The notes: generated by a model from the sequence alone, not told the origin. A DNA stretch of 64,000 nt from IMGVR_UViG_3300033049_000066:186001-250000; one strand, 5' to 3'. Positions 45,191 through 53,218 are shown, numbered from the stretch's first letter. Program-made: numbers and translations.

Positions 45191-46203
45191 TACCAAAATC
45201 CTTTCTTGAGAAGTGTACCATTTGCGTATTCCTCTAAGCTAAATTCTTTACTAACTTGATCTCGCGTTTGAATTGGGATCATTGTAAAATTAATAGTAAT
45301 CTTAGTAGGCACATAAGTGGCTTTTGTGTATACATCACTGTATTTAATTTTTCTTGCGGCCTCGGCTCCTTTTTTCTTCCGGGTGCCGCCAGTAGTTAGG
45401 CCAAGTCCACGCATTCTATCCACGTTGCTAGTGCTCGAGGCTTTCAGCTCTATCTCAGTTGGATCTGTCCCAGGCGTTTCCCCACACGGAATATAATCTA
45501 CATCGGTTGGCAAATTGTAATTCATCATTGTTATTGCGCAAGGGTGATTGTTAAATTGATATTCGCCAAGGCCGGTTAAGAATACAACCGGTGGCGGCAT
45601 TCCTCGGTTCACTGAATCTTTTCCGTAAAACATCTTCGTTGCTGATCTTAAAAAATGTAAGGTTGCTAACATATAATTTGCTTCGTTTACGTCGTTTGCA
45701 GTAAATGTTGCTGTTATAATTAAATTCTGTGTGACACTGCCTGTATAAAAGTATCCTCGGTAGTTGCTGTGAGTTAAATCGTAATTTTCGTAGTTAGCAT
45801 TGTACTGCACTGCGATCTCAGGCGTGTACGGAAATATGATCCCATCGGTTGTTTGAAGTGGCGCAAGGATTCCAGGATTGTCGGCGTTGTACAGGTACTT
45901 ACTGTCGGGTCCGAGGTGCAAACGTACACGCCAGTCTGCTTCTTTGATAGCAAGTCTCTGAGCTTCTGCTTTGCGTTCTTCTTGAATCGCAAATTCTTCT
46001 CTTGATAATTCACCTGAGATATCAAGATCCGTTATTCCAGCTATATCTACATCCGCTGTGTCAGTATCGTCTTCAAGAAAGTCTACAGCTTCAAGAAAGT
46101 CTGCGTCATCTGGCTCTGCGTCGAAATCAGCCTTACTAACTGGCACTCCGTCTATTAAATAGATTATGTTAAAATCATTATCAAGTTCAGTTGTCTTTGC
46201 CAT
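45190..46203 (-). CDS. baseplate / tail-tube junction-like protein
   Basis: IFPYTP and PPP..FL.G.G motifs; start moved to ATG 46203 behind a late promoter. Confidence 0.65.
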   Translation of the reverse strand: MAKTTELDNDFNIIYLIDGVPVSKADFDAEPDDADFLEAVDFLEDDTDTADVDIAGITDLDISGELSREEFAIQEERKAEAQRLAIKEADWRVRLHLGPDSKYLYNADNPGILAPLQTTDGIIFPYTPEIAVQYNANYENYDLTHSNYRGYFYTGSVTQNLIITATFTANDVNEANYMLATLHFLRSATKMFYGKDSVNRGMPPPVVFLTGLGEYQFNNHPCAITMMNYNLPTDVDYIPCGETPGTDPTEIELKASSTSNVDRMRGLGLTTGGTRKKKGAEAARKIKYSDVYTKATYVPTKITINFTMIPIQTRDQVSKEFSLEEYANGTLLKKGFW

Positions 46204-46225
46204 AGTATATCCTTTTATATTCATA

Positions 46226-46233
46226 TATTTATG
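46226..46233 (-). promoter_or_regulatory. late promoter CATAAATA heading the baseplate operon
   Basis: On - strand 22 nt upstream of ATG 46203. Confidence 0.7.
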
Positions 46234-46266
46234 GTGAGTCGTTATAACCCAATATAATAAAAGAGG

Positions 46267-46295
46267 TTGACATGTGAGTACATAGGTGCTATAAT
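46267..46295 (+). promoter_or_regulatory. early promoter of the late sigma factor
   Basis: AGAGG-TTGACA, 17 nt, TATAAT. Confidence 0.88.
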
Positions 46296-46324
46296 TAAAG
46301 CTCATTAAGCTAAAGAGGAGAATT

Positions 46325-48295
46325 ATGGCTAAACGGAAAAAGAATTATTTAAATAACAAGGATATGCTCAAGGAAATTCACCTTAGCAAAATATCATATT
46401 GTGCGTTTACTGACAAGGTAGAGGACAATCAACAAGATTTCATCGTGGAAAGTGCTGACGCGATCTTCGGTACGCAGAATGTAGAGGTTAAGAAAGAAAC
46501 CGAAACCTCAGCTGCGGTTTTTGAAGACATCCCGGTAATACAGCTTGCGAGAAAAGCTAGGGCAGCGAGACTTACAAAATTAGAAATTCCAACTGCGGTA
46601 GAAGATATAGTTGACACAGATATTGTATTTCGTGTAATGACGAACGAACACATTCCACGAGTCCCCAAGAAAAAATCCAAGGCACTACTAGCAAAAGAAG
46701 CAAAGCAAGCGAAATCCGACGCGATTTTTGACGAGCTTATGGATGGCGACGAGGATGGCGACGCTCCTACACCCACCGGGCCTGAGGTTATCTTGATCCC
46801 AATGCGTGTAAATTTTCCACCGTTTTTCCATTACCGGTTGACGGATGAACCGGGTGAACTAAAACTTGTCGGCAAATCCCACTGGCGTGGTGACTTAGAA
46901 ACAGGCAGTTTCAACAAGACCAAGGGGCAAACTACAAACAATCTTGCTATGATGTACATCAAGCTCTGTGAGCGGTACGGCACTAGAGGCAATTGGAGAG
47001 GGTATTGTGTAGATCAGGCCACAGAGGCTCTCACAGACCGTGGGTGGTTATTTGAAAATGAGATTACCGAAAATGATAAAATTTTATCATATAATGGCTC
47101 GACTATGGTTTGGTCTAACATTAATTCTATGTTTCGGGATAATTACAGTGGATTAATGCATAAACTTACATCTCGTAGCATCGATTCACTAATCACACCA
47201 AGTCATAAAATTGTAACCGATAAGGGGTTACTAAAGATTGAATATCTCAAAGAATCAGACCGGGTCGTTGTAATGGGTGATGCTGTGCCTACGGAGTTTG
47301 AGAAAACATACACAGATCAACTAGTTGAATTAGCTGGATGGATCATAACAGAAGGTAATTATCAACCCAAAAAGAAAATTGTTACGATTTATCAAAACGA
47401 AGGTTCTTATGCCGACCGCATACGTAAATGTTTACATAACTTAAATTACTCGTTTTCTGAACGCAAATCTTCGAAATCCGAGAATATTTCATTTGCTATT
47501 AAGAGGAAGTACTGGGATGAAATCACAAATCTATTACCTAACAAAAATCTAACTATGGATTTTATTTTAAAACTTACGTATAATCAACGTGAATTATTAG
47601 TTAAAACAATGGTGGATGGTGATGGACACAGACACGGATTATTAATGCGATATACTCAGAAAAATAAAGAACACATGGATCATTTTCAAACGTTATGTGC
47701 GCTAATTGGGTTAAAATCAAATGTTCATTATGTCGAGAATAAAATGTCATTCGGTAAGCCGGTTAACTATTATGTAACAAATGTGTTTTCAAAACGAGGA
47801 AACTACACACGTGGATCGGCTATCGACATGCACGGTGGGAAAGACAATGGGAGTAGACACGTCGGCAAGGGGAAATTTTTCCACCCCAACAAGCCCACGG
47901 TGCAGTACGATGGTACGGTATGGTGCCCGGAGACTGACTACGGTTGCTTCTTAGCTAGGCGTAACGGAAAAGTATATTTGACCGGAAATACGTACAACGA
48001 TGAAATGCAGGGGCAGGCTTTACTCCAGCTTTCGCAAATTGGACTTCAGTTCAATGAGCTAAAATCGCAGAATCCATTTGCGTACTACACTGCCGCGGTC
48101 ACGAACAGTTTTACCCGGGTCTTAAACATTGAGAAAAAGATGCAAAATATCCGAGACGATATCCTCGAGTCAAATGGGCTCACTCCTAGCTGGACAAGGC
48201 AATACGCGAATGATGCGAAAAAGATGCCCCAGTATGATTACAATCTAAATGATCCCAGGAAGAAAAAGGCCAAAGAAGAGGAACCTAAAACTTAG
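46325..48295 (+). CDS. gp55: gp55-like late-transcription sigma factor (intein-containing)
   Basis: KKNYLNNKD, NWRGY/TYNDEM, NPFAYYT..NSF.R....EKK once the intein is removed (about 328-aa extein). Confidence 0.85.
   Translation: MAKRKKNYLNNKDMLKEIHLSKISYCAFTDKVEDNQQDFIVESADAIFGTQNVEVKKETETSAAVFEDIPVIQLARKARAARLTKLEIPTAVEDIVDTDIVFRVMTNEHIPRVPKKKSKALLAKEAKQAKSDAIFDELMDGDEDGDAPTPTGPEVILIPMRVNFPPFFHYRLTDEPGELKLVGKSHWRGDLETGSFNKTKGQTTNNLAMMYIKLCERYGTRGNWRGYCVDQATEALTDRGWLFENEITENDKILSYNGSTMVWSNINSMFRDNYSGLMHKLTSRSIDSLITPSHKIVTDKGLLKIEYLKESDRVVVMGDAVPTEFEKTYTDQLVELAGWIITEGNYQPKKKIVTIYQNEGSYADRIRKCLHNLNYSFSERKSSKSENISFAIKRKYWDEITNLLPNKNLTMDFILKLTYNQRELLVKTMVDGDGHRHGLLMRYTQKNKEHMDHFQTLCALIGLKSNVHYVENKMSFGKPVNYYVTNVFSKRGNYTRGSAIDMHGGKDNGSRHVGKGKFFHPNKPTVQYDGTVWCPETDYGCFLARRNGKVYLTGNTYNDEMQGQALLQLSQIGLQFNELKSQNPFAYYTAAVTNSFTRVLNIEKKMQNIRDDILESNGLTPSWTRQYANDAKKMPQYDYNLNDPRKKKAKEEEPKT
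47006..47989 (+). mobile_element. class-1 intein with LAGLIDADG endonuclease (328 aa)
   Basis: Cys1 (CVDQATEALT), TPSH block B, LAGWIITEG and LVKTMVDGDG, VWCPET, terminal TGN, +1 Thr. Confidence 0.92.
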
Positions 48296-48304
48296 CCCGA
48301 CGGA

Positions 48305-48361
48305 TATACTCTAAACATTTGCGATTGTTGTTGTTTTATCGTATAATATGTTTAGCGTATA
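48305..48361 (+). promoter_or_regulatory. promoter (TTGCGA 48319-48324, 17 nt, TATAAT 48342-48347) enclosed by a 14-bp inverted repeat
   Basis: TATACTCTAAACAT / ATGTTTAGCGTATA, one mismatch. Confidence 0.7.
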
Positions 48362-48431
48362 TTCACCAGCATGGAATAGATCCTAGCAACCGGCAGAGTT
48401 GTAGATGTACGTAAATGACGGATAATAATAA

Positions 48432-49445
48432 ATGAGTCAACTGTTTAAGAAGGCAATGATCTTCACTGATATACATTTTGGGCTAAAAAGTAATAGTCAG
48501 CAGCATAACAAAGATTGTGAAGACTTTGTGCAATGGGCAATAAAAACCGGCAAGGAGCATGGCTGCGAGACTGGCATGTTCTTGGGAGATTGGCATCATC
48601 ATAGATCATCAATTAATTTGCAAACTCTAAACTACAGTTTACGAAGTCTGGAACGGTTAAATGATGAGTTTGATAATTTCTACTTTATTCCTGGCAATCA
48701 TGATTTGTACTACCGCGACAAGCGTGATATACACGGCATTGAGTGGGCTAAACATCTTCCAAATATAACAATTTGCAATGATTGGTTTCATCAAGATAAT
48801 GTATCAATTGTTCCGTGGTTGGTCGGCGACGATTACAAAAAATTAATAAAAATAAAAGCCAAGTACATGTTCGGCCACTTCGAGCTTCCGCACTTTAAAA
48901 TGAATGCGTTAGTTGAGATGCCGGATACTGGCACTGTGAAAAGTTCGCAGTTAGCAAATGTCGAAAAGGTCTTTAGTGGGCATTTTCACATGAGGCAGGT
49001 TCGTGGCAATGTCACGTACATCGGCAATTGTTTCCCGCACAATTTTTCGGATGCTGGGGATGACCAGCGTGGGGTGATGATTCTCGAGTGGGATAAGGAA
49101 CCGAAATTTTTTGCCTGGCCTGATCAACCCCTATACAAGGTCGTGAATTTAAGTACGCTCCTTGACGATGCGGATTCTATTCTCGGACCGAATATGCACG
49201 TGAAGGTCAATCTCGACATTGACGTCAGCTATGAAGAAGCAAATTTCATCAAGGAAACTTTCGTCGAGAAATATAAACTGCGTGAAATTAGTTTGATTCC
49301 TTTGAAGGAACAAGAATTTGAAGACGATAATAATCAGGCTGTCTCGTTTAACAGTGTTGATACTATCATACACGAACAAATCGCCGCAATCGAAAGTGAG
49401 TTTTATAAAACTGGATTGCTAATGGAAATATATAACAACCTTTGA
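48432..49445 (+). CDS. gp47: recombination endonuclease subunit (gp47/Mre11/SbcD-like)
   Basis: FTDIHFG, FLGDWHH, PGNHD, GHFE, SGHFH. Confidence 0.93.
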   Translation: MSQLFKKAMIFTDIHFGLKSNSQQHNKDCEDFVQWAIKTGKEHGCETGMFLGDWHHHRSSINLQTLNYSLRSLERLNDEFDNFYFIPGNHDLYYRDKRDIHGIEWAKHLPNITICNDWFHQDNVSIVPWLVGDDYKKLIKIKAKYMFGHFELPHFKMNALVEMPDTGTVKSSQLANVEKVFSGHFHMRQVRGNVTYIGNCFPHNFSDAGDDQRGVMILEWDKEPKFFAWPDQPLYKVVNLSTLLDDADSILGPNMHVKVNLDIDVSYEEANFIKETFVEKYKLREISLIPLKEQEFEDDNNQAVSFNSVDTIIHEQIAAIESEFYKTGLLMEIYNNL

Positions 49446-49452
49446 GAAAACT

Positions 49453-50250
49453 ATGAACGAAAAAACAATACATTTTATCGCTGGTTTACCACGTGCAGGT
49501 AGTACGCTACTCTGTAACATTTTAAATCAAAATCCAAGATTTCATGCTACAAGCACCTCGGGCATTTTAGACATTGTACTCGCTATACGCAACCAATGGG
49601 AAAATGTTAACGAATTCCAAGCAACTCCAAATAAGCTCGGAAAAGACGCAGTAATGAAACCAATTTTACAAAATTACTATTCAACAGTCGAGAGGCCGGT
49701 TGTATTTGACAAGTCGAGAGGATGGCCCGGGTATTTAGAACTTGCTGAACATTGTCTAGGCACAAAAGTCAAGATGATTGTCCCGGTTCGTAGAGTCGTA
49801 GATATTCTCGCTTCGTTTGAAAAATTAACAAGAAACAATTCACGGACTTGGCAAATGCCGCAAGAGAAATCACACTTCTTTGAGATGCAGACGCTCGCTG
49901 GTAGGGCAGATGTTTGGATGAGAAACGATCAGCCTGTGGGCATTGCCTACAATCGCGTAAGAGATGCGATAGACAGGGGCTTTGGCGAACAACTACATTT
50001 TGTGGAATTTGAAAATTTAACCGCGCATCCTGAGGCTACAATGGCTGCTTTGTACGAGTTTCTCGGTGAGGTGTATTTTGCGCATGATTTTTTAAATGTT
50101 GAGCAAAGCACAAATGAGAACGATGACGTCCATGGTATCCCTGGACTCCACACGATCCGACAGGTAGTGAAGCCGTTTGACGTAGATGCTAAGAAAATCA
50201 TCGGAGCGGATGCTTACAAGAAATACGAAAATGCGGAATTTTGGAGATAG
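49453..50250 (+). CDS. PAPS-dependent sulfotransferase
   Basis: FIAGLPRAGSTLL 5'-PSB loop, FDKSR, VR...DILAS, VEFENL...PE..M..LYEFLG. Confidence 0.85.
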   Translation: MNEKTIHFIAGLPRAGSTLLCNILNQNPRFHATSTSGILDIVLAIRNQWENVNEFQATPNKLGKDAVMKPILQNYYSTVERPVVFDKSRGWPGYLELAEHCLGTKVKMIVPVRRVVDILASFEKLTRNNSRTWQMPQEKSHFFEMQTLAGRADVWMRNDQPVGIAYNRVRDAIDRGFGEQLHFVEFENLTAHPEATMAALYEFLGEVYFAHDFLNVEQSTNENDDVHGIPGLHTIRQVVKPFDVDAKKIIGADAYKKYENAEFWR

Positions 50251-50254
50251 ATAA

Positions 50255-53218
50255 TTGATTAAAATTAAAAGTTTGGTTGTAAAAAACTTTATGAGTATCG
50301 GAAACGCAAGTCAAGCCGTGGACTTTGACCGTGATGACTTGACCCTCGTTCTTGGGGAGAATCTTGATCTTGGGAGCAATGGTGCGAGAAATGGTACCGG
50401 GAAGGCGCAACCGTTGTACTCAAAAATAAAAACACCCGGTGGCTGGGCTACAATGGGCGATATGGTCGTTGGGCAAGCCATCACCACACCTACCGGGGGC
50501 AGTGCTGAGGTCAGTGGCGTTTTCCCACAGGGTGAGGTAGAAACATACAGAATTCATTTTTCTGATGGTAGGCAAACAGATGCTTGCAAAGACCATCTGT
50601 GGAAAGTTTACTCGCACTCGTTTAAAGATAAATGGCAGGTTCTAACTACTGCTGAGTTAATTTCGCATACAGAAAAATATAAAAATCATAAAAATAAATC
50701 TACGTACTACAAATATGTTCCGTTGATTATCCCAGAAAATATTGCAGACATTAAGTTGCCATTTGATCCATATTTCCTTGGCGCGATGCTCGGAGACGGT
50801 GGCATGACCGTACACGGTATCGGGTTTACAACTGCTGATGACGAAATGTTTGAAAATATGAAACAGGTTCTGCCAGAAAATTATCAGATAACAAAAAATC
50901 ATTATGATGACTACGGATATTCATTAAAATTTATTAATCGAAAAAAGTACAGCACATTACGACTAGGATTATCTGCGCTGAAGTTATACGGAACGAAATC
51001 AGCAACGAAATTTATTCCAGAAATATATAAAAATGCCTCCATTAATCAAAAAATAGAACTTATACAAGGGATAGTAGACACCGACGGTTATGTCGCAAAG
51101 AAAAACGGGTCACTTTCTATTACAACCGTCAGCAAGCAAATGGCGGATGATATTCAAGAAATAATACAGTCTATTGGCGGGATCGCTAAAATAAAAATTA
51201 AAACGAACTGTGGGTATAAAAAAGACGGCATATTTATACCATGTCAGGACGCCTACACCGTTTGCATCACATACCATACTCCAAAACTTTTAGCTCGACT
51301 TAGCCGGAAAAAAGATCTCTTACCGGGTGAGAATTATCAGTACAAAAATAGAAAATTAAGAATCGATCATATAGAATATATTGGTAAGATTGAATCCCAA
51401 TGTATTATGGTCGAACACTCAGATCACTTATACATTACAGACAATTATATTGTTACACATAATACGACGTTGATAAACGCTCTGAGCTATGGGCTGTACG
51501 GCAGTGCGCTTTCTGAGATTCGCGTGAACAATCTTGTCAACAAAACTAACAGAAAAAATATGCTCGTGTCGGTTGAGTTCAGCATCGACGAGGCGCAGTA
51601 CAGAATTGAAAGGGGCAGATCTCCAAATGTGCTGAAATTTTACAAAAATGATCTTGAGCAGAAGGATGAGGATGGTGCGCAGGGCGAGAACAGGGAAACG
51701 CAAAAAGAGATAAATGATCTACTGGGGCTGAGTCACGCGATGTTCAAACACGCTGTCGCGCTAAACACCTACACCACCCCGTTTCTGTCTCTCAAGAATG
51801 CTGACCAGAAAGATATTATCGAGGAGCTTCTCGGAATCACTGTCCTTACCGAGAAGGCCGAGGCACTGAAAGCGGTCAACAAGATCACAAAGGATGGGGT
51901 CAAGGAAGAAGAATTCCGGCTTGAGACTATCATGAAGGCGAATCTGCGAATTGACGAACAGATTGAGGGGTTGAAGCGCCGGCAGCGGATGTGGCAGATC
52001 TCCCACAATAACACAGTAGATGGTTATACTTCAAAGATTGAAAAATTGATGGTGGTCGACATCGAAGACGAGATTGCTAAGCATAACCGCAATGCGAAAA
52101 TCCGGGTTGATACTGACAAGAAAAACACCAAGGGCAAAGCAGCAGTTGACAAATTTAACGCTGAACTAAAAATTCAAAAGGATCGTGAGATTGCCGCCAT
52201 TGACAAATTCAACTCTGCTGTGCTAGAATGTAATCGGTGGATCAAACAAATTGAAAATGATACAAAGGCCCAGGAGCGTCGGTCGCAAGCGTTACAAAGA
52301 GATATTGATTTACTAGAAGATCACAAGTGCCACGCCTGCGGGCAGGATCTCCATGATGAGACACAGGAAGCAAATATTGCGGCTAAGAAAACAGAATTAA
52401 CAGAATGTGCAATGCAGATTCTATCTAATCAAACGCAGGATACAGAGCAGAAACTAAAACTTGCGGACCTTGGCTCACCGCCGGTAACAAAAGAAGCTAA
52501 GAAAGCCAAAACGTTCAAAGAAGAGCAGTACAAGGGCAACCTCACTTTTTACAAAACCATCGACGAGGCTCACGGACACAAGAGCTCGCTCGCTACGCTC
52601 ACATCGCAGCTTGAAACCGCTGTAGACACTGCTGATCCGTACGTTGAACAAGTAGACGAAATGGTTGCTAGTGGGCTAGTTGAGGTCTCTTACGAATCTT
52701 TAAATCAGCTTGTCGAGCTACAAGAGCATCAGGCATTTCTACTAAAACTTTTAACGAGCAAAGATAGTTTCATTCGCAAGAAAATCATTGAGCAAAATTT
52801 AGCGTACTTGAATGGGCGGCTTACATATTACCTCACTGAAATCGGGCTTCCGCATCGTGTGCGGTTCATGTCGGATCTTAGCGTTGAGATTACAGACTTG
52901 GGCAGAGACCTGGACTTTGACAATTTGTCACGGGGTGAGAGGACTAGGCTGATTTTGTCTCTGTCTTGGGCGTTTAGGGATGTCTGGGAAAGTCTGTACA
53001 GCCACATCAACTTACTTTTTGTAGACGAGCTTGTCGACAATGGACTTGACACAAATGGCGTCGAAGCCGCTATTAAAATTATGAAAAGTATGGCGAGGGA
53101 GCGTGGGAAAAGTGTTTGGCTGGTCTCGCACAGAGAAGAATTAATTAGCCGCGTGAATAACACAATGAAAGTGATTAAGAGCGGTGGCTACACTGAATAC
53201 AGTAGCGAATTAGAATAG
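50255..53218 (+). CDS. gp46: recombination ATPase (gp46/Rad50/SbcC-like, intein-containing)
   Basis: KNFMSIG, Walker A NGTGK/TT split by the intein, CHAC zinc hook, LSRGE, LFVDE, LVSH. Confidence 0.95.
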   Translation: MIKIKSLVVKNFMSIGNASQAVDFDRDDLTLVLGENLDLGSNGARNGTGKAQPLYSKIKTPGGWATMGDMVVGQAITTPTGGSAEVSGVFPQGEVETYRIHFSDGRQTDACKDHLWKVYSHSFKDKWQVLTTAELISHTEKYKNHKNKSTYYKYVPLIIPENIADIKLPFDPYFLGAMLGDGGMTVHGIGFTTADDEMFENMKQVLPENYQITKNHYDDYGYSLKFINRKKYSTLRLGLSALKLYGTKSATKFIPEIYKNASINQKIELIQGIVDTDGYVAKKNGSLSITTVSKQMADDIQEIIQSIGGIAKIKIKTNCGYKKDGIFIPCQDAYTVCITYHTPKLLARLSRKKDLLPGENYQYKNRKLRIDHIEYIGKIESQCIMVEHSDHLYITDNYIVTHNTTLINALSYGLYGSALSEIRVNNLVNKTNRKNMLVSVEFSIDEAQYRIERGRSPNVLKFYKNDLEQKDEDGAQGENRETQKEINDLLGLSHAMFKHAVALNTYTTPFLSLKNADQKDIIEELLGITVLTEKAEALKAVNKITKDGVKEEEFRLETIMKANLRIDEQIEGLKRRQRMWQISHNNTVDGYTSKIEKLMVVDIEDEIAKHNRNAKIRVDTDKKNTKGKAAVDKFNAELKIQKDREIAAIDKFNSAVLECNRWIKQIENDTKAQERRSQALQRDIDLLEDHKCHACGQDLHDETQEANIAAKKTELTECAMQILSNQTQDTEQKLKLADLGSPPVTKEAKKAKTFKEEQYKGNLTFYKTIDEAHGHKSSLATLTSQLETAVDTADPYVEQVDEMVASGLVEVSYESLNQLVELQEHQAFLLKLLTSKDSFIRKKIIEQNLAYLNGRLTYYLTEIGLPHRVRFMSDLSVEITDLGRDLDFDNLSRGERTRLILSLSWAFRDVWESLYSHINLLFVDELVDNGLDTNGVEAAIKIMKSMARERGKSVWLVSHREELISRVNNTMKVIKSGGYTEYSSELE
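50405..51463 (+). mobile_element. Ala-start class-3 intein with LAGLIDADG endonuclease (353 aa)
   Basis: Ala1 (AQPLYSKIKTPGGW), DHLW, SQCIMV, IVTHN then +1 Thr; FLGAMLGDG and IQGIVDTDG. Confidence 0.92.

What the first reader, a model, noticed from the sequence alone, without database searches (positions are those of the whole stretch)
47006..47989. Intein inside the late sigma factor (gp55-like)
Seen: a 328-aa Cys1...Gly-Asn/Thr intein with LAGLIDADG motifs splits the conserved GY/TYxxEM motif. Established: most inteins sit in replication, recombination and nucleotide-metabolism proteins, and some splice conditionally. Inference: a sigma factor is an unusual host, and splicing would gate the whole early-to-late switch, a potential post-translational timer or stress sensor. 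The penultimate residue is Gly rather than the usual His.
Basis: partly seen in the sequence, partly recalled or inferred. Interest (0 to 1): 0.7.

Follow-up and report, generated by a model that had tools for sequence, protein, structure and literature searches.

The report
Mobile intein in phage late sigma
A marine jumbo phage's only late-transcription sigma factor (T4 gp55 type) is interrupted by a real, intact, mobile self-splicing intein from a large phage intein family; it looks like an ordinary selfish element, not a built-in timer, though sigma factors had not been reported as intein hosts in the papers I could search.

Summary
Window 47006-47989 encodes a 328-aa intein with a LAGLIDADG homing endonuclease, inserted in frame in a gp55-type late sigma gene (46325-48295) between ...WRGY and TYNDEM.... 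The site matches T4 gp55 Y63|T64, just before helix H3, which binds the RNA polymerase clamp helices.

It is not a one-off. About 434 protein clusters (at 90% identity) of intein-bearing length matched. All 120 of the top hits that reach the N junction, plus cyanophages B3 and B23, carry a homologous intein at this exact site. About 1,600 clusters of intein-free length also matched.

- The window's four nearest extein relatives lack the intein.
- Presence flips at least 24 times on the extein tree.
- Intein and extein similarities are uncoupled.
- Mini-inteins that have lost the endonuclease occupy the same site.

Together these are the marks of a homing element.

The penultimate Gly is a family hallmark (Cys1, block F Trp-Cys, Thr-Gly-Asn). 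In two tested inteins ending Gly-Asn, changing Gly to His slowed or abolished splicing.

Splicing is logically needed before late transcription. Nothing supports regulated splicing, although two invariant catalytic-site cysteines leave redox sensitivity possible.

Verdict: a new member (new host protein) of a known kind; moderate interest.

The parts
46325..48295 (+). Precursor gene: gp55-type late sigma factor with an in-frame intein (656 aa plus stop)
   Evidence: Single ORF. PHROG 12791 E 2.5e-69. It is the only gp55 homologue in the 293-kb record.
46325..47005 (+). N-extein, 227 aa, ends ...GNWRGY
   Evidence: PHROG 12791 profile positions 4-189. 75-78% identical to intein-free alleles.
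47006..47989 (+). Intein, 328 aa, from Cys1 to Gly327-Asn328
   Evidence: GC 37.5% against 44% in the exteins.
47006..47047 (+). Splicing block A (CVDQATEALTDRGW); Cys1 is invariant in the family
47195..47212 (+). Splicing block B (TPSHKI): Thr64 (B:7), His67 (B:10), Lys68 (B:11), Ile69 (B:12)
   Evidence: T64, P65 and H67 are invariant and K68 is kept in at least 90% of sequences. Family-wide, B:11 is Lys or Arg in 89 of 100 representatives.
47324..47359 (+). First LAGLIDADG motif (VELAGWIITEGN); the acidic residue is Glu116
   Evidence: Pfam PF14528. E116 is at least 90% conserved and G117 is invariant. The region superposes on I-DmoI at Z about 15 over residues 100-266.
47594..47629 (+). 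Second LAGLIDADG motif (LLVKTMVDGDGH); the acidic residue is Asp206
   Evidence: Pfam PF14528 best stretch, residues 199-248. D206 and G207 are at least 90% conserved.
47918..47935 (+). Splicing block F (VWCPET): Trp306-Cys307, with Cys at the position I assign as F:4
   Evidence: W306, C307 and P308 are invariant. W-C is kept in 100 of 100 divergent family representatives. Cys307 lies 21 residues before the terminal Asn, as in the class 3 MP-Be DnaB intein (C320 to N341; PMC2807308).
47969..47989 (+). Splicing block G (KVYLTGN): Thr326 (G:5), Gly327 (G:6), Asn328 (G:7)
   Evidence: G-N in 120 of 121 aligned gp55 inteins and S-N in the other one. The AceL NrdHF class 3 intein has the same TGN ending.
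47990..48295 (+). C-extein, 101 aa plus stop, starts Thr+1 (TYNDEMQG...)
   Evidence: PHROG 12791 positions 190-278 and PHROG 234. It aligns to T4 gp55 T64...E70-M71, the start of helix H3.

Best explanation
This is a mobile intein: a HINT splicing domain carrying a nested LAGLIDADG homing endonuclease. It has homed into the gene for the phage's gp55-type late sigma factor, in the linker just ahead of helix H3.

The gene is translated as a 656-aa precursor. The intein then most likely excises itself without regulation and joins Tyr227 to Thr556, giving a 328-aa sigma factor.

Proposed chemistry (inferred):
- Cys1, possibly together with or replaced by the invariant block F Cys307, attacks the Tyr-Cys peptide bond.
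- Thr+1 takes over the N-extein.
- Asn328 cyclises, helped by Lys68 (B:11) rather than by a penultimate His.

The endonuclease is inferred to cut intein-free gp55 alleles during co-infection, so that repair copies the intein in.

The element is best seen as a selfish passenger. It persists because it sits in an essential, conserved site and splices cleanly, not as a device that times late transcription.
For: Shown here:
- The insertion is exact, in frame, and lies between adjacent positions of the sigma profile.
- The high-confidence model has the intein-plus-endonuclease fold.
- All splicing-block residues and both LAGLIDADG acidic residues are conserved across 75-121 homologues.
- 434 clusters of intein-bearing length and 1,633 clusters of intein-free length matched.
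- Intein presence changes at least 24 times on a 239-sequence extein tree, against about 78 for shuffled labels. The window's four nearest extein relatives are intein-free.
- Intein and extein identities are almost uncorrelated (Spearman 0.12). Some pairs have 95% identical inteins in 59% identical exteins, and the reverse also occurs.
- A 43-44% identical intein sits at the same site in the Synechococcus phage B23 and B3 gp55 genes, whose exteins are only 24% identical to the window's.
- Mini-inteins of 144-180 aa and intermediates of 237-297 aa occupy the same site.
- Intein GC is 37.5% (endonuclease part 32.6%) against 44% in the exteins.
- The record holds only one gp55 gene, so splicing is needed.

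From papers:
- The Bethlehem gp51 intein has a penultimate Gly and splices well, and G316H slows it (PMC5050341). The homologous phosphoesterase intein of phage Gandalf20 aligns with the window's intein and shares the VWC and TGN motifs.
- The closest HINT structure is AceL NrdHF (6ZGQ; Z 18.1, rmsd 1.9 A over 139 aa). [quoted passage not shown]
Against: - No splicing or cleavage assay exists for this intein. Activity is inferred only from conservation and from relatives.
- Pfam's HINT models do not detect it, and sequence matches to solved inteins are weak.
- Two invariant cysteines in the presumed active site (Cys1 and Cys307) could make splicing redox-sensitive, as in some mycobacterial DnaB inteins (PMC6195587 abstract).
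- The extein tree is a FastTree built on the top 120 hits of each kind, so the count of changes is approximate.
- Being selfish does not exclude a secondary regulatory effect.
Confidence: 0.8

Rival explanations
1. Conditional splicing as a regulator. Splicing of the sigma precursor responds to redox state, metal, temperature or salt, so the intein gates or times the early-to-late switch and is kept for that benefit.
For: - The intein sits in the sigma-R2-like core, four residues before the conserved Glu that corresponds to T4 E70. T4 E70, D74 and E77 bind the beta' clamp helices. An unspliced precursor is therefore probably inactive.
- It is the only gp55 gene in the record.
- Cys1 and Cys307 are both invariant and, going by the geometry of class 3 inteins, should lie close together.
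- Oxidation inhibits other Cys-dependent inteins (PMC7664689; PMC6195587 abstract).
Against: - The nearest relatives do without the intein, and presence is sporadic.
- The intein's history is uncoupled from its host gene's.
- The endonuclease active site is conserved, as expected of a homing element.
- The same intein family sits in dozens of unrelated host proteins with the same catalytic residues, so those residues are not an adaptation to sigma.
- The closest characterised relative splices in minutes under many conditions.
Confidence: 0.1
2. A class 3 or hybrid mechanism. The invariant block F Cys307, not Cys1, makes the first thioester, as in class 3 inteins. This family would then be a Cys1-bearing branch of class 3, or a transitional form.
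For: - Cys at the position aligned to F:4, Thr at G:5 and Thr/Ser at +1 are all class 3 hallmarks (PMC2807308) and are conserved here.
- Relatives of this intein in actinophage portal, terminase and polymerase genes carry the full Trp-Cys-Thr triplet together with Cys1 and Gly-Asn.
- The best-matching mini-intein structure is the class 3 AceL NrdHF intein. It has a Met-Cys-Thr triplet and the same TGN ending.
Against: - Cys1 is invariant in all 120 aligned gp55 inteins that reach the N junction. Typical class 3 inteins have lost this nucleophile, so it is probably used here.
- B:12 is Ile in the window, not Trp.
- The Bethlehem gp51 intein was treated as class 1.
- I could not obtain a residue-level superposition, so the F:4 assignment rests on motif spacing alone.
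Confidence: 0.3
3. A decayed, non-splicing intein. The sigma gene would then be dead or work only as a precursor, and the Gly in place of His would be a sign of decay.
For: - The canonical penultimate His and the usual F:4 Asp are missing.
- Pfam's intein splicing-domain models do not match.
Against: - The frame is intact.
- The Gly and every catalytic residue are kept in well over a hundred diverged copies.
- This is the only sigma copy.
- Inteins with the same Gly-Asn ending are experimentally active.
Confidence: 0.03

Closest known systems
Mycobacteriophage Bethlehem gp51 (RDF / metallophosphoesterase) intein, Kelley et al. 2016 (PMC5050341)
   Same: The homologous phosphoesterase intein of phage Gandalf20 matches the window's intein (26-27% identity over the N-terminal half). 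It shares Cys1, TxxH, VWC in block F, the TGN ending with Ser/Thr at +1, and a LAGLIDADG endonuclease. The Bethlehem intein's penultimate Gly was shown to be functional, and changing it to His slowed splicing.
   Different: The host protein and insertion site differ, as does the phage group (actinophage against marine jumbo phage). The sequences are only distantly related.
AceL NrdHF class 3 split intein (PDB 6ZGQ; PMC7891396)
   Same: It is the closest HINT-domain structure (Z 18.1, rmsd 1.9 A over 139 aa). It shares the Thr-Gly-Asn ending, a basic residue at B:11 in place of the penultimate His, Cys at F:4, and a non-Trp hydrophobic residue at B:12.
   Different: AceL NrdHF is naturally split and carries no endonuclease. 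By its class 3 assignment it should lack an N-terminal nucleophile; I did not see its residue 1. It sits in a ribonucleotide reductase. The window's intein is contiguous, has Cys1, and carries a LAGLIDADG domain.
gp55 inteins of Synechococcus phages B23 and B3 (MN695335, MN695334; annotated only as hypothetical protein / T4-like gp55)
   Same: Same insertion site (NY|C...TGN|SY), homologous intein (43-44% identity, full length), and the same gp55 / gp47 / gp46 neighbourhood.
   Different: The host is a short T4-type gp55 (164-aa exteins) in a cyanomyovirus (Kyanoviridae). Its exteins are only 24% identical to the window's.
Archaeal and yeast intein homing endonucleases (TliVMA, PI-PfuI, PI-SceI)
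   Same: Same overall two-domain architecture: HINT plus LAGLIDADG (Z 19-24 over about 280-295 residues).
   Different: Sequence identity is only 13-19%. These are canonical class 1 inteins in ATPase or ribonucleotide reductase hosts; that their catalytic residues are standard is from my own knowledge and was not checked here.
T4 gp55 late sigma factor (PDB 7D7C / 7D7D; PMC7892883)
   Same: A profile of the intein-free homologues matches T4 gp55 at E 3e-8. The conserved GY-T...EM region aligns with T4 G62-Y63-T64...E70-M71.
   Different: T4 gp55 has no intein. It also lacks the roughly 180-aa domain that the jumbo-phage type carries between H1 and H2.

Membership tests
Intein (HINT protein-splicing element) | In-frame insertion that interrupts a conserved host protein, with extein homology contiguous across the junction | tested here: met
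   PHROG 12791 positions 4-189 | 190-278; intein-free homologues are uninterrupted at the site
Intein (HINT protein-splicing element) | Junction residues: Cys/Ser at position 1, C-terminal Asn, Cys/Ser/Thr at +1 | tested here: met
   Cys1, Asn328, Thr+1. All 120 aligned homologues that reach the N junction have Y|C...N|T/S.
Intein (HINT protein-splicing element) | Block B Thr-x-x-His | tested here: met
   T64-P-S-H67; T64, P65 and H67 are invariant
Intein (HINT protein-splicing element) | HINT fold | tested here: met
   Model pLDDT 96.7. Z 14-18 to mini-inteins and Z 22-24 to full inteins.
Intein (HINT protein-splicing element) | Demonstrated protein splicing | not testable with these tools
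   Needs expression of the precursor
LAGLIDADG homing endonuclease (intein-nested, two-motif type) | Two LAGLIDADG motifs, each ending in an acidic residue followed by Gly, in an I-DmoI-like fold | tested here: met
   PF14528 above its cut-off. E116-G117 and D206-G207 are conserved. Z about 15 to I-DmoI over residues 100-266.
LAGLIDADG homing endonuclease (intein-nested, two-motif type) | Site-specific cleavage of the intein-free allele | not testable with these tools
   Indirect support only: sporadic distribution and uncoupled phylogenies
Class 1 (standard) intein | N-terminal Cys/Ser nucleophile | tested here: met
   Cys1 is invariant
Class 1 (standard) intein | Usual assisting residues: Asp at F:4 and a penultimate His (typical, not obligatory) | tested here: not met
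   Cys307 and Gly327 stand there instead. Phage class 1 inteins without the His are documented.
Class 3 intein | No nucleophile at position 1 | tested here: not met
   Cys1 is present and invariant
Class 3 intein | Trp at B:12 | tested here: not met
   Ile69 in the window. In 100 family representatives it is Phe in 53 and Trp in 38.
Class 3 intein | Cys at F:4 | tested here: inconclusive
   Cys307 is invariant and has class 3 spacing to the terminal Asn, but no residue-level structural superposition was available
Class 3 intein | Thr at G:5 and Ser/Thr at +1 | tested here: met
   Thr326 and Thr+1
T4 gp55-type late sigma factor (host protein) | Homology to the gp55 sigma-R2-like domain, including the H3 acidic residue that contacts the clamp helices | tested here: met
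   PHROG 12791 and 234. PDB 7D7C gp55 at E 3e-8; the Glu of TYNDEM aligns with T4 E70.
T4 gp55-type late sigma factor (host protein) | T4-like neighbourhood (gp47 / gp46 downstream) | tested here: met
   Metallophosphoesterase at 48432-49445 and SMC-like ATPase at 50255-53218. Same order in XbC2 and B23.
T4 gp55-type late sigma factor (host protein) | Recognition of late promoters; binding of the sliding clamp and a gp33-like co-activator | not tested
   I did not search for late promoters or for gp33 / gp45 homologues

The most novel reading that the evidence does not exclude
The gp55 intein family would be a mechanistic hybrid that needs both Cys1 and the block F Cys307. The two thiols would form a reversible disulfide under oxidative stress. 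In marine phages, including cyanophages, production of active late sigma factor, and so the commitment to virion production, would then be coupled to the redox state of the host.
Probability: 0.08. Interest if true: 0.75.

Novelty: new member of a known kind. Interest (0 to 1): 0.4.

Why it matters
Inteins are catalogued mainly in replication, repair, nucleotide-metabolism and packaging proteins. Finding that a transcription initiation factor, the gp55 late sigma, is a frequent intein host in marine phages widens that list. The host set comprises hundreds of clusters, two cultured cyanophages, and every stage from full intein to mini-intein to empty site.

It also offers a clean natural system for two questions:
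- how an intein family with Cys1, a block F Trp-Cys pair and a Thr-Gly-Asn ending actually splices (class 1, class 3 or both);
- whether an intein in a master regulator has any effect on the timing of infection.

For annotation, it explains over-long 'hypothetical' gp55 genes in jumbo-phage and cyanophage genomes.

Tried and rejected
- Megablast of the gene against 50,697 phage records found nothing. The window's phage has no close cultured relative.
- Pfam finds no HINT or intein splicing family in the protein, only LAGLIDADG_3. Sequence and profile searches of the PDB gave only weak N-terminal matches to mini-inteins. The C-terminal blocks therefore had to be assigned from motif spacing and from family alignments.
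I removed that row and re-ran it.
- Laying contigs of three seawater runs on 45200-49500 showed no joint that skips the intein. One run has a contig end at 47001, five bases before the intein, but the C-terminal junction is not broken, so this says nothing about co-existing intein-free variants.
- The paper that tested WCT inteins beginning with Cys or Ser (PMC3133030) is not held.
- The T4 late-complex paper does not discuss Y63 or T64 directly.
- The own genome holds no second copy of this intein family and no second gp55 gene.
- I considered a group I intron or a free-standing endonuclease gene as the insert. I rejected both because the frame is continuous and the splicing blocks are present.

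Full report
**What is there**

Window 46325-48295 (+) is a single open frame of 656 aa. Residues 228-555 (window 47006-47989) run from Cys to Gly-Asn and are followed by Thr.

The flanking parts match PHROG 12791, 'sigma factor for late transcription', at profile positions 4-189 and 190-278. The 328 residues are therefore inserted between two adjacent positions of the host family. The C-terminal part also matches PHROG 234, 'late sigma transcription factor'.

An intein-free homologue in Xanthomonas phage XbC2 reads ...NYRNY|TYLDEMM at this point.

**The insert is an intein with a homing endonuclease**

- Pfam finds LAGLIDADG_3 above its cut-off.
- An AlphaFold model built on 75 homologues has mean pLDDT 96.7 and pTM 0.92.
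- The model matches crystal structures of endonuclease-bearing inteins (TliVMA, PI-PfuI, PI-SceI) at Foldseek E values down to 7e-16 and at Z 19-24 over 280-295 residues. Its middle part (residues 100-266) matches I-DmoI at Z about 15.
- Conserved positions across the family are those expected for an active element:
  - Cys1 and block A;
  - Thr64-Pro-x-His67 in block B;
  - Glu116-Gly117 and Asp206-Gly207 at the ends of the two LAGLIDADG motifs;
  - Val-Trp-Cys-Pro in block F;
  - Leu-Thr-Gly-Asn in block G.

**The host and the site**

A profile of intein-free homologues matches T4 gp55 in the late-transcription complex (PDB 7D7C) at E 3e-8. The alignment places the insertion between T4 Tyr63 and Thr64.

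In T4, helix H3 residues E70, D74 and E77 bind the beta' clamp helices. L54 and R57, in the preceding helix, line the pockets that recognise the promoter (PMC7892883).

A model of a 77-86% identical intein-free homologue puts the site in the loop (residues 217-227) two residues before the helix that carries the conserved Glu-Met.

The intein therefore sits in the functional core, as inteins usually do. That the precursor is inactive is an inference from this position, not a result.

The record is a 293-kb viral contig from a seawater metagenome, estimated 83% complete. It holds only this one gp55 gene.

**It is not a one-off**

A search with the whole precursor found 434 clusters (at 90% identity) of comparable length. 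Of the 120 best hits, one is an N-terminally truncated copy of the window's own protein. The other 119 all carry the intein at the same place.

With the window and cyanophage B23 added, the junctions read as follows:

| Junction | Sequences |
|---|---|
| Y\|C...GN\|T | 116 |
| ...GN\|S | 4 |
| ...SN\|T | 1 |

Cultured Synechococcus phages B23 and B3 have a 43-44% identical intein at the same site of their short T4-type gp55. There it is annotated only as 'hypothetical protein; T4-like gp55'.

In a library of 1.84 billion cluster representatives, the intein alone has 5,335 relatives at E up to 1e-3 and 167 at E up to 1e-30. At least 56 of the best 150 are gp55 hosts, of both the jumbo type and the T4 type.

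**It behaves as a mobile element**

- A search with the N-extein found 1,633 clusters of intein-free length. The closest are 75-78% identical.
- On a tree of 239 extein sequences, intein presence changes at least 24 times, against about 78 for shuffled labels. The window's four nearest neighbours are intein-free.
- Pairwise intein identity and extein identity are almost uncorrelated (Spearman 0.12 over 7,260 pairs). There are pairs such as 95% against 59%, and 59% against 98%.
- At the same site there are full inteins (about 310-358 aa), intermediates (237-297 aa) and mini-inteins without the endonuclease (144-180 aa).
- The intein is AT-richer than its host gene: GC 37.5%, and 32.6% in the endonuclease part, against 44% in the exteins.

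These are the stages of the homing cycle: invasion, endonuclease decay, and loss. The tree is a FastTree built on the best-scoring hits only, so the count of changes is approximate.

**The penultimate Gly and the mechanism**

Gly-Asn is not a peculiarity of this copy. It is the rule in the gp55 inteins. It is also the rule in relatives inserted in other proteins: portal, terminase, DNA polymerase, PhoH, thymidylate synthase, metallophosphoesterase and many unnamed hosts.

Two inteins that end Gly-Asn have been tested:
- **Bethlehem gp51 intein.** It splices well with Gly, and the G316H change slows it (PMC5050341).
- **AceL NrdHF intein.** It ends Thr-Gly-Asn and G145H abolishes its activity. 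Arg69 at B:11 contacts the C-terminal scissile carbonyl in place of the missing His, and splicing finishes within minutes under many conditions (PMC7891396).

AceL NrdHF is also the best structural match among mini-inteins (Z 18.1, rmsd 1.9 A, against about 15 for the others). Here B:11 is Lys68; it is Lys or Arg in 89 of 100 family representatives.

The family combines the class 1 nucleophile Cys1 with three class 3 hallmarks (PMC2807308):
- Cys at the position I align to F:4. It is invariant, together with the preceding Trp, in 100 of 100 representatives.
- Thr at G:5.
- Thr or Ser at +1.

B:12 is Ile in the window. Elsewhere in the family it is Phe or Trp.

Several actinophage relatives have the complete Trp-Cys-Thr triplet together with Cys1. 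[quoted passage not shown] Whether Cys1, Cys307 or both start the reaction cannot be settled from sequence. Because both are invariant, I take both to matter.

**The regulatory idea**

Late transcription logically cannot start before some precursor has spliced.

Nothing, however, suggests that splicing is conditional or that the intein is kept for that reason:
- Close relatives lack it.
- The same catalytic make-up occurs in many unrelated hosts.
- The nearest characterised relative is fast and robust.

One opening remains. Two active-site cysteines could make splicing sensitive to oxidants, as reported for mycobacterial DnaB inteins (PMC6195587 abstract; PMC7664689). I rate an adaptive sensor or timer at about 10%.

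**Novelty**

Five full-text searches found no paper that describes an intein in gp55 or in any sigma factor. A jumbo-phage review mentions inteins only in other genes. InBase could not be queried.

The element itself belongs to a known kind and to a recognisable phage intein family. What is new is the host protein and how common this allele is in marine phages. I class it as a new member of a known kind, of moderate interest.

Noticed in passing
window 50255-53218 (+); intein about 50405-51463: The gp46 / Rad50-like ATPase two genes downstream carries a second, unrelated intein of 353 aa in its Walker A loop (...NGTGK|AQPLYS...IVTHN|TTLINAL). It starts with Ala and has DHLW in block B, a Cys 20 residues before the terminal Asn, and THN|T. 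That is the full class 3 Trp-Cys-Thr signature, together with a LAGLIDADG domain (PF14528 E 1.2e-10; Hom_end).
   Followed up: partly
outside the window: G000:C1 about 17.0-18.6 kb (locus L014): This looks like a 'fractured gene'. A ligase-like ORF ends ...IKWDG|CIAGDSTLIT... in an N-terminal intein half, followed by a stop. A separate ORF follows in another frame. Then comes a C-terminal intein half ending ...NCLIHN|SPAIVFG. The arrangement resembles a split intein with a free-standing endonuclease gene between the halves.
   Followed up: partly
window 46325-47005 (N-extein); model of homologue P0127: This jumbo-phage type of gp55 has about 180 extra residues between the first helix and the helix preceding the intein site, compared with the 185-aa T4 gp55. 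The model shows a strand-rich domain plus a disordered acidic stretch (pLDDT under 50 at residues 135-146). Its function is unknown.
   Followed up: no
window 49453-50250 (+): A 265-aa sulfotransferase-family gene (PF13469 E 3e-15) sits between the gp47-like and gp46-like recombination nuclease genes. In XbC2 these two genes are adjacent, and in B23 only a small hypothetical ORF lies between them.
   Followed up: no
window 47001-47242, run X2: In a second seawater sample the assembly breaks five bases before the intein start. The first 240 bases of the intein are uncovered and the next pieces have lower depth (5-9 against 16-21). This could reflect variants of the intein's N-terminal part, or simply assembly noise.
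   Followed up: no
loci L004-L008 (actinophage and metagenomic phage portal, terminase and polymerase genes): Relatives of this intein combine Cys1 with the complete class 3 triplet (HRW in block B, VWCP in block F, TGN at the end). The family therefore straddles the class 1 / class 3 boundary.
   Followed up: partly
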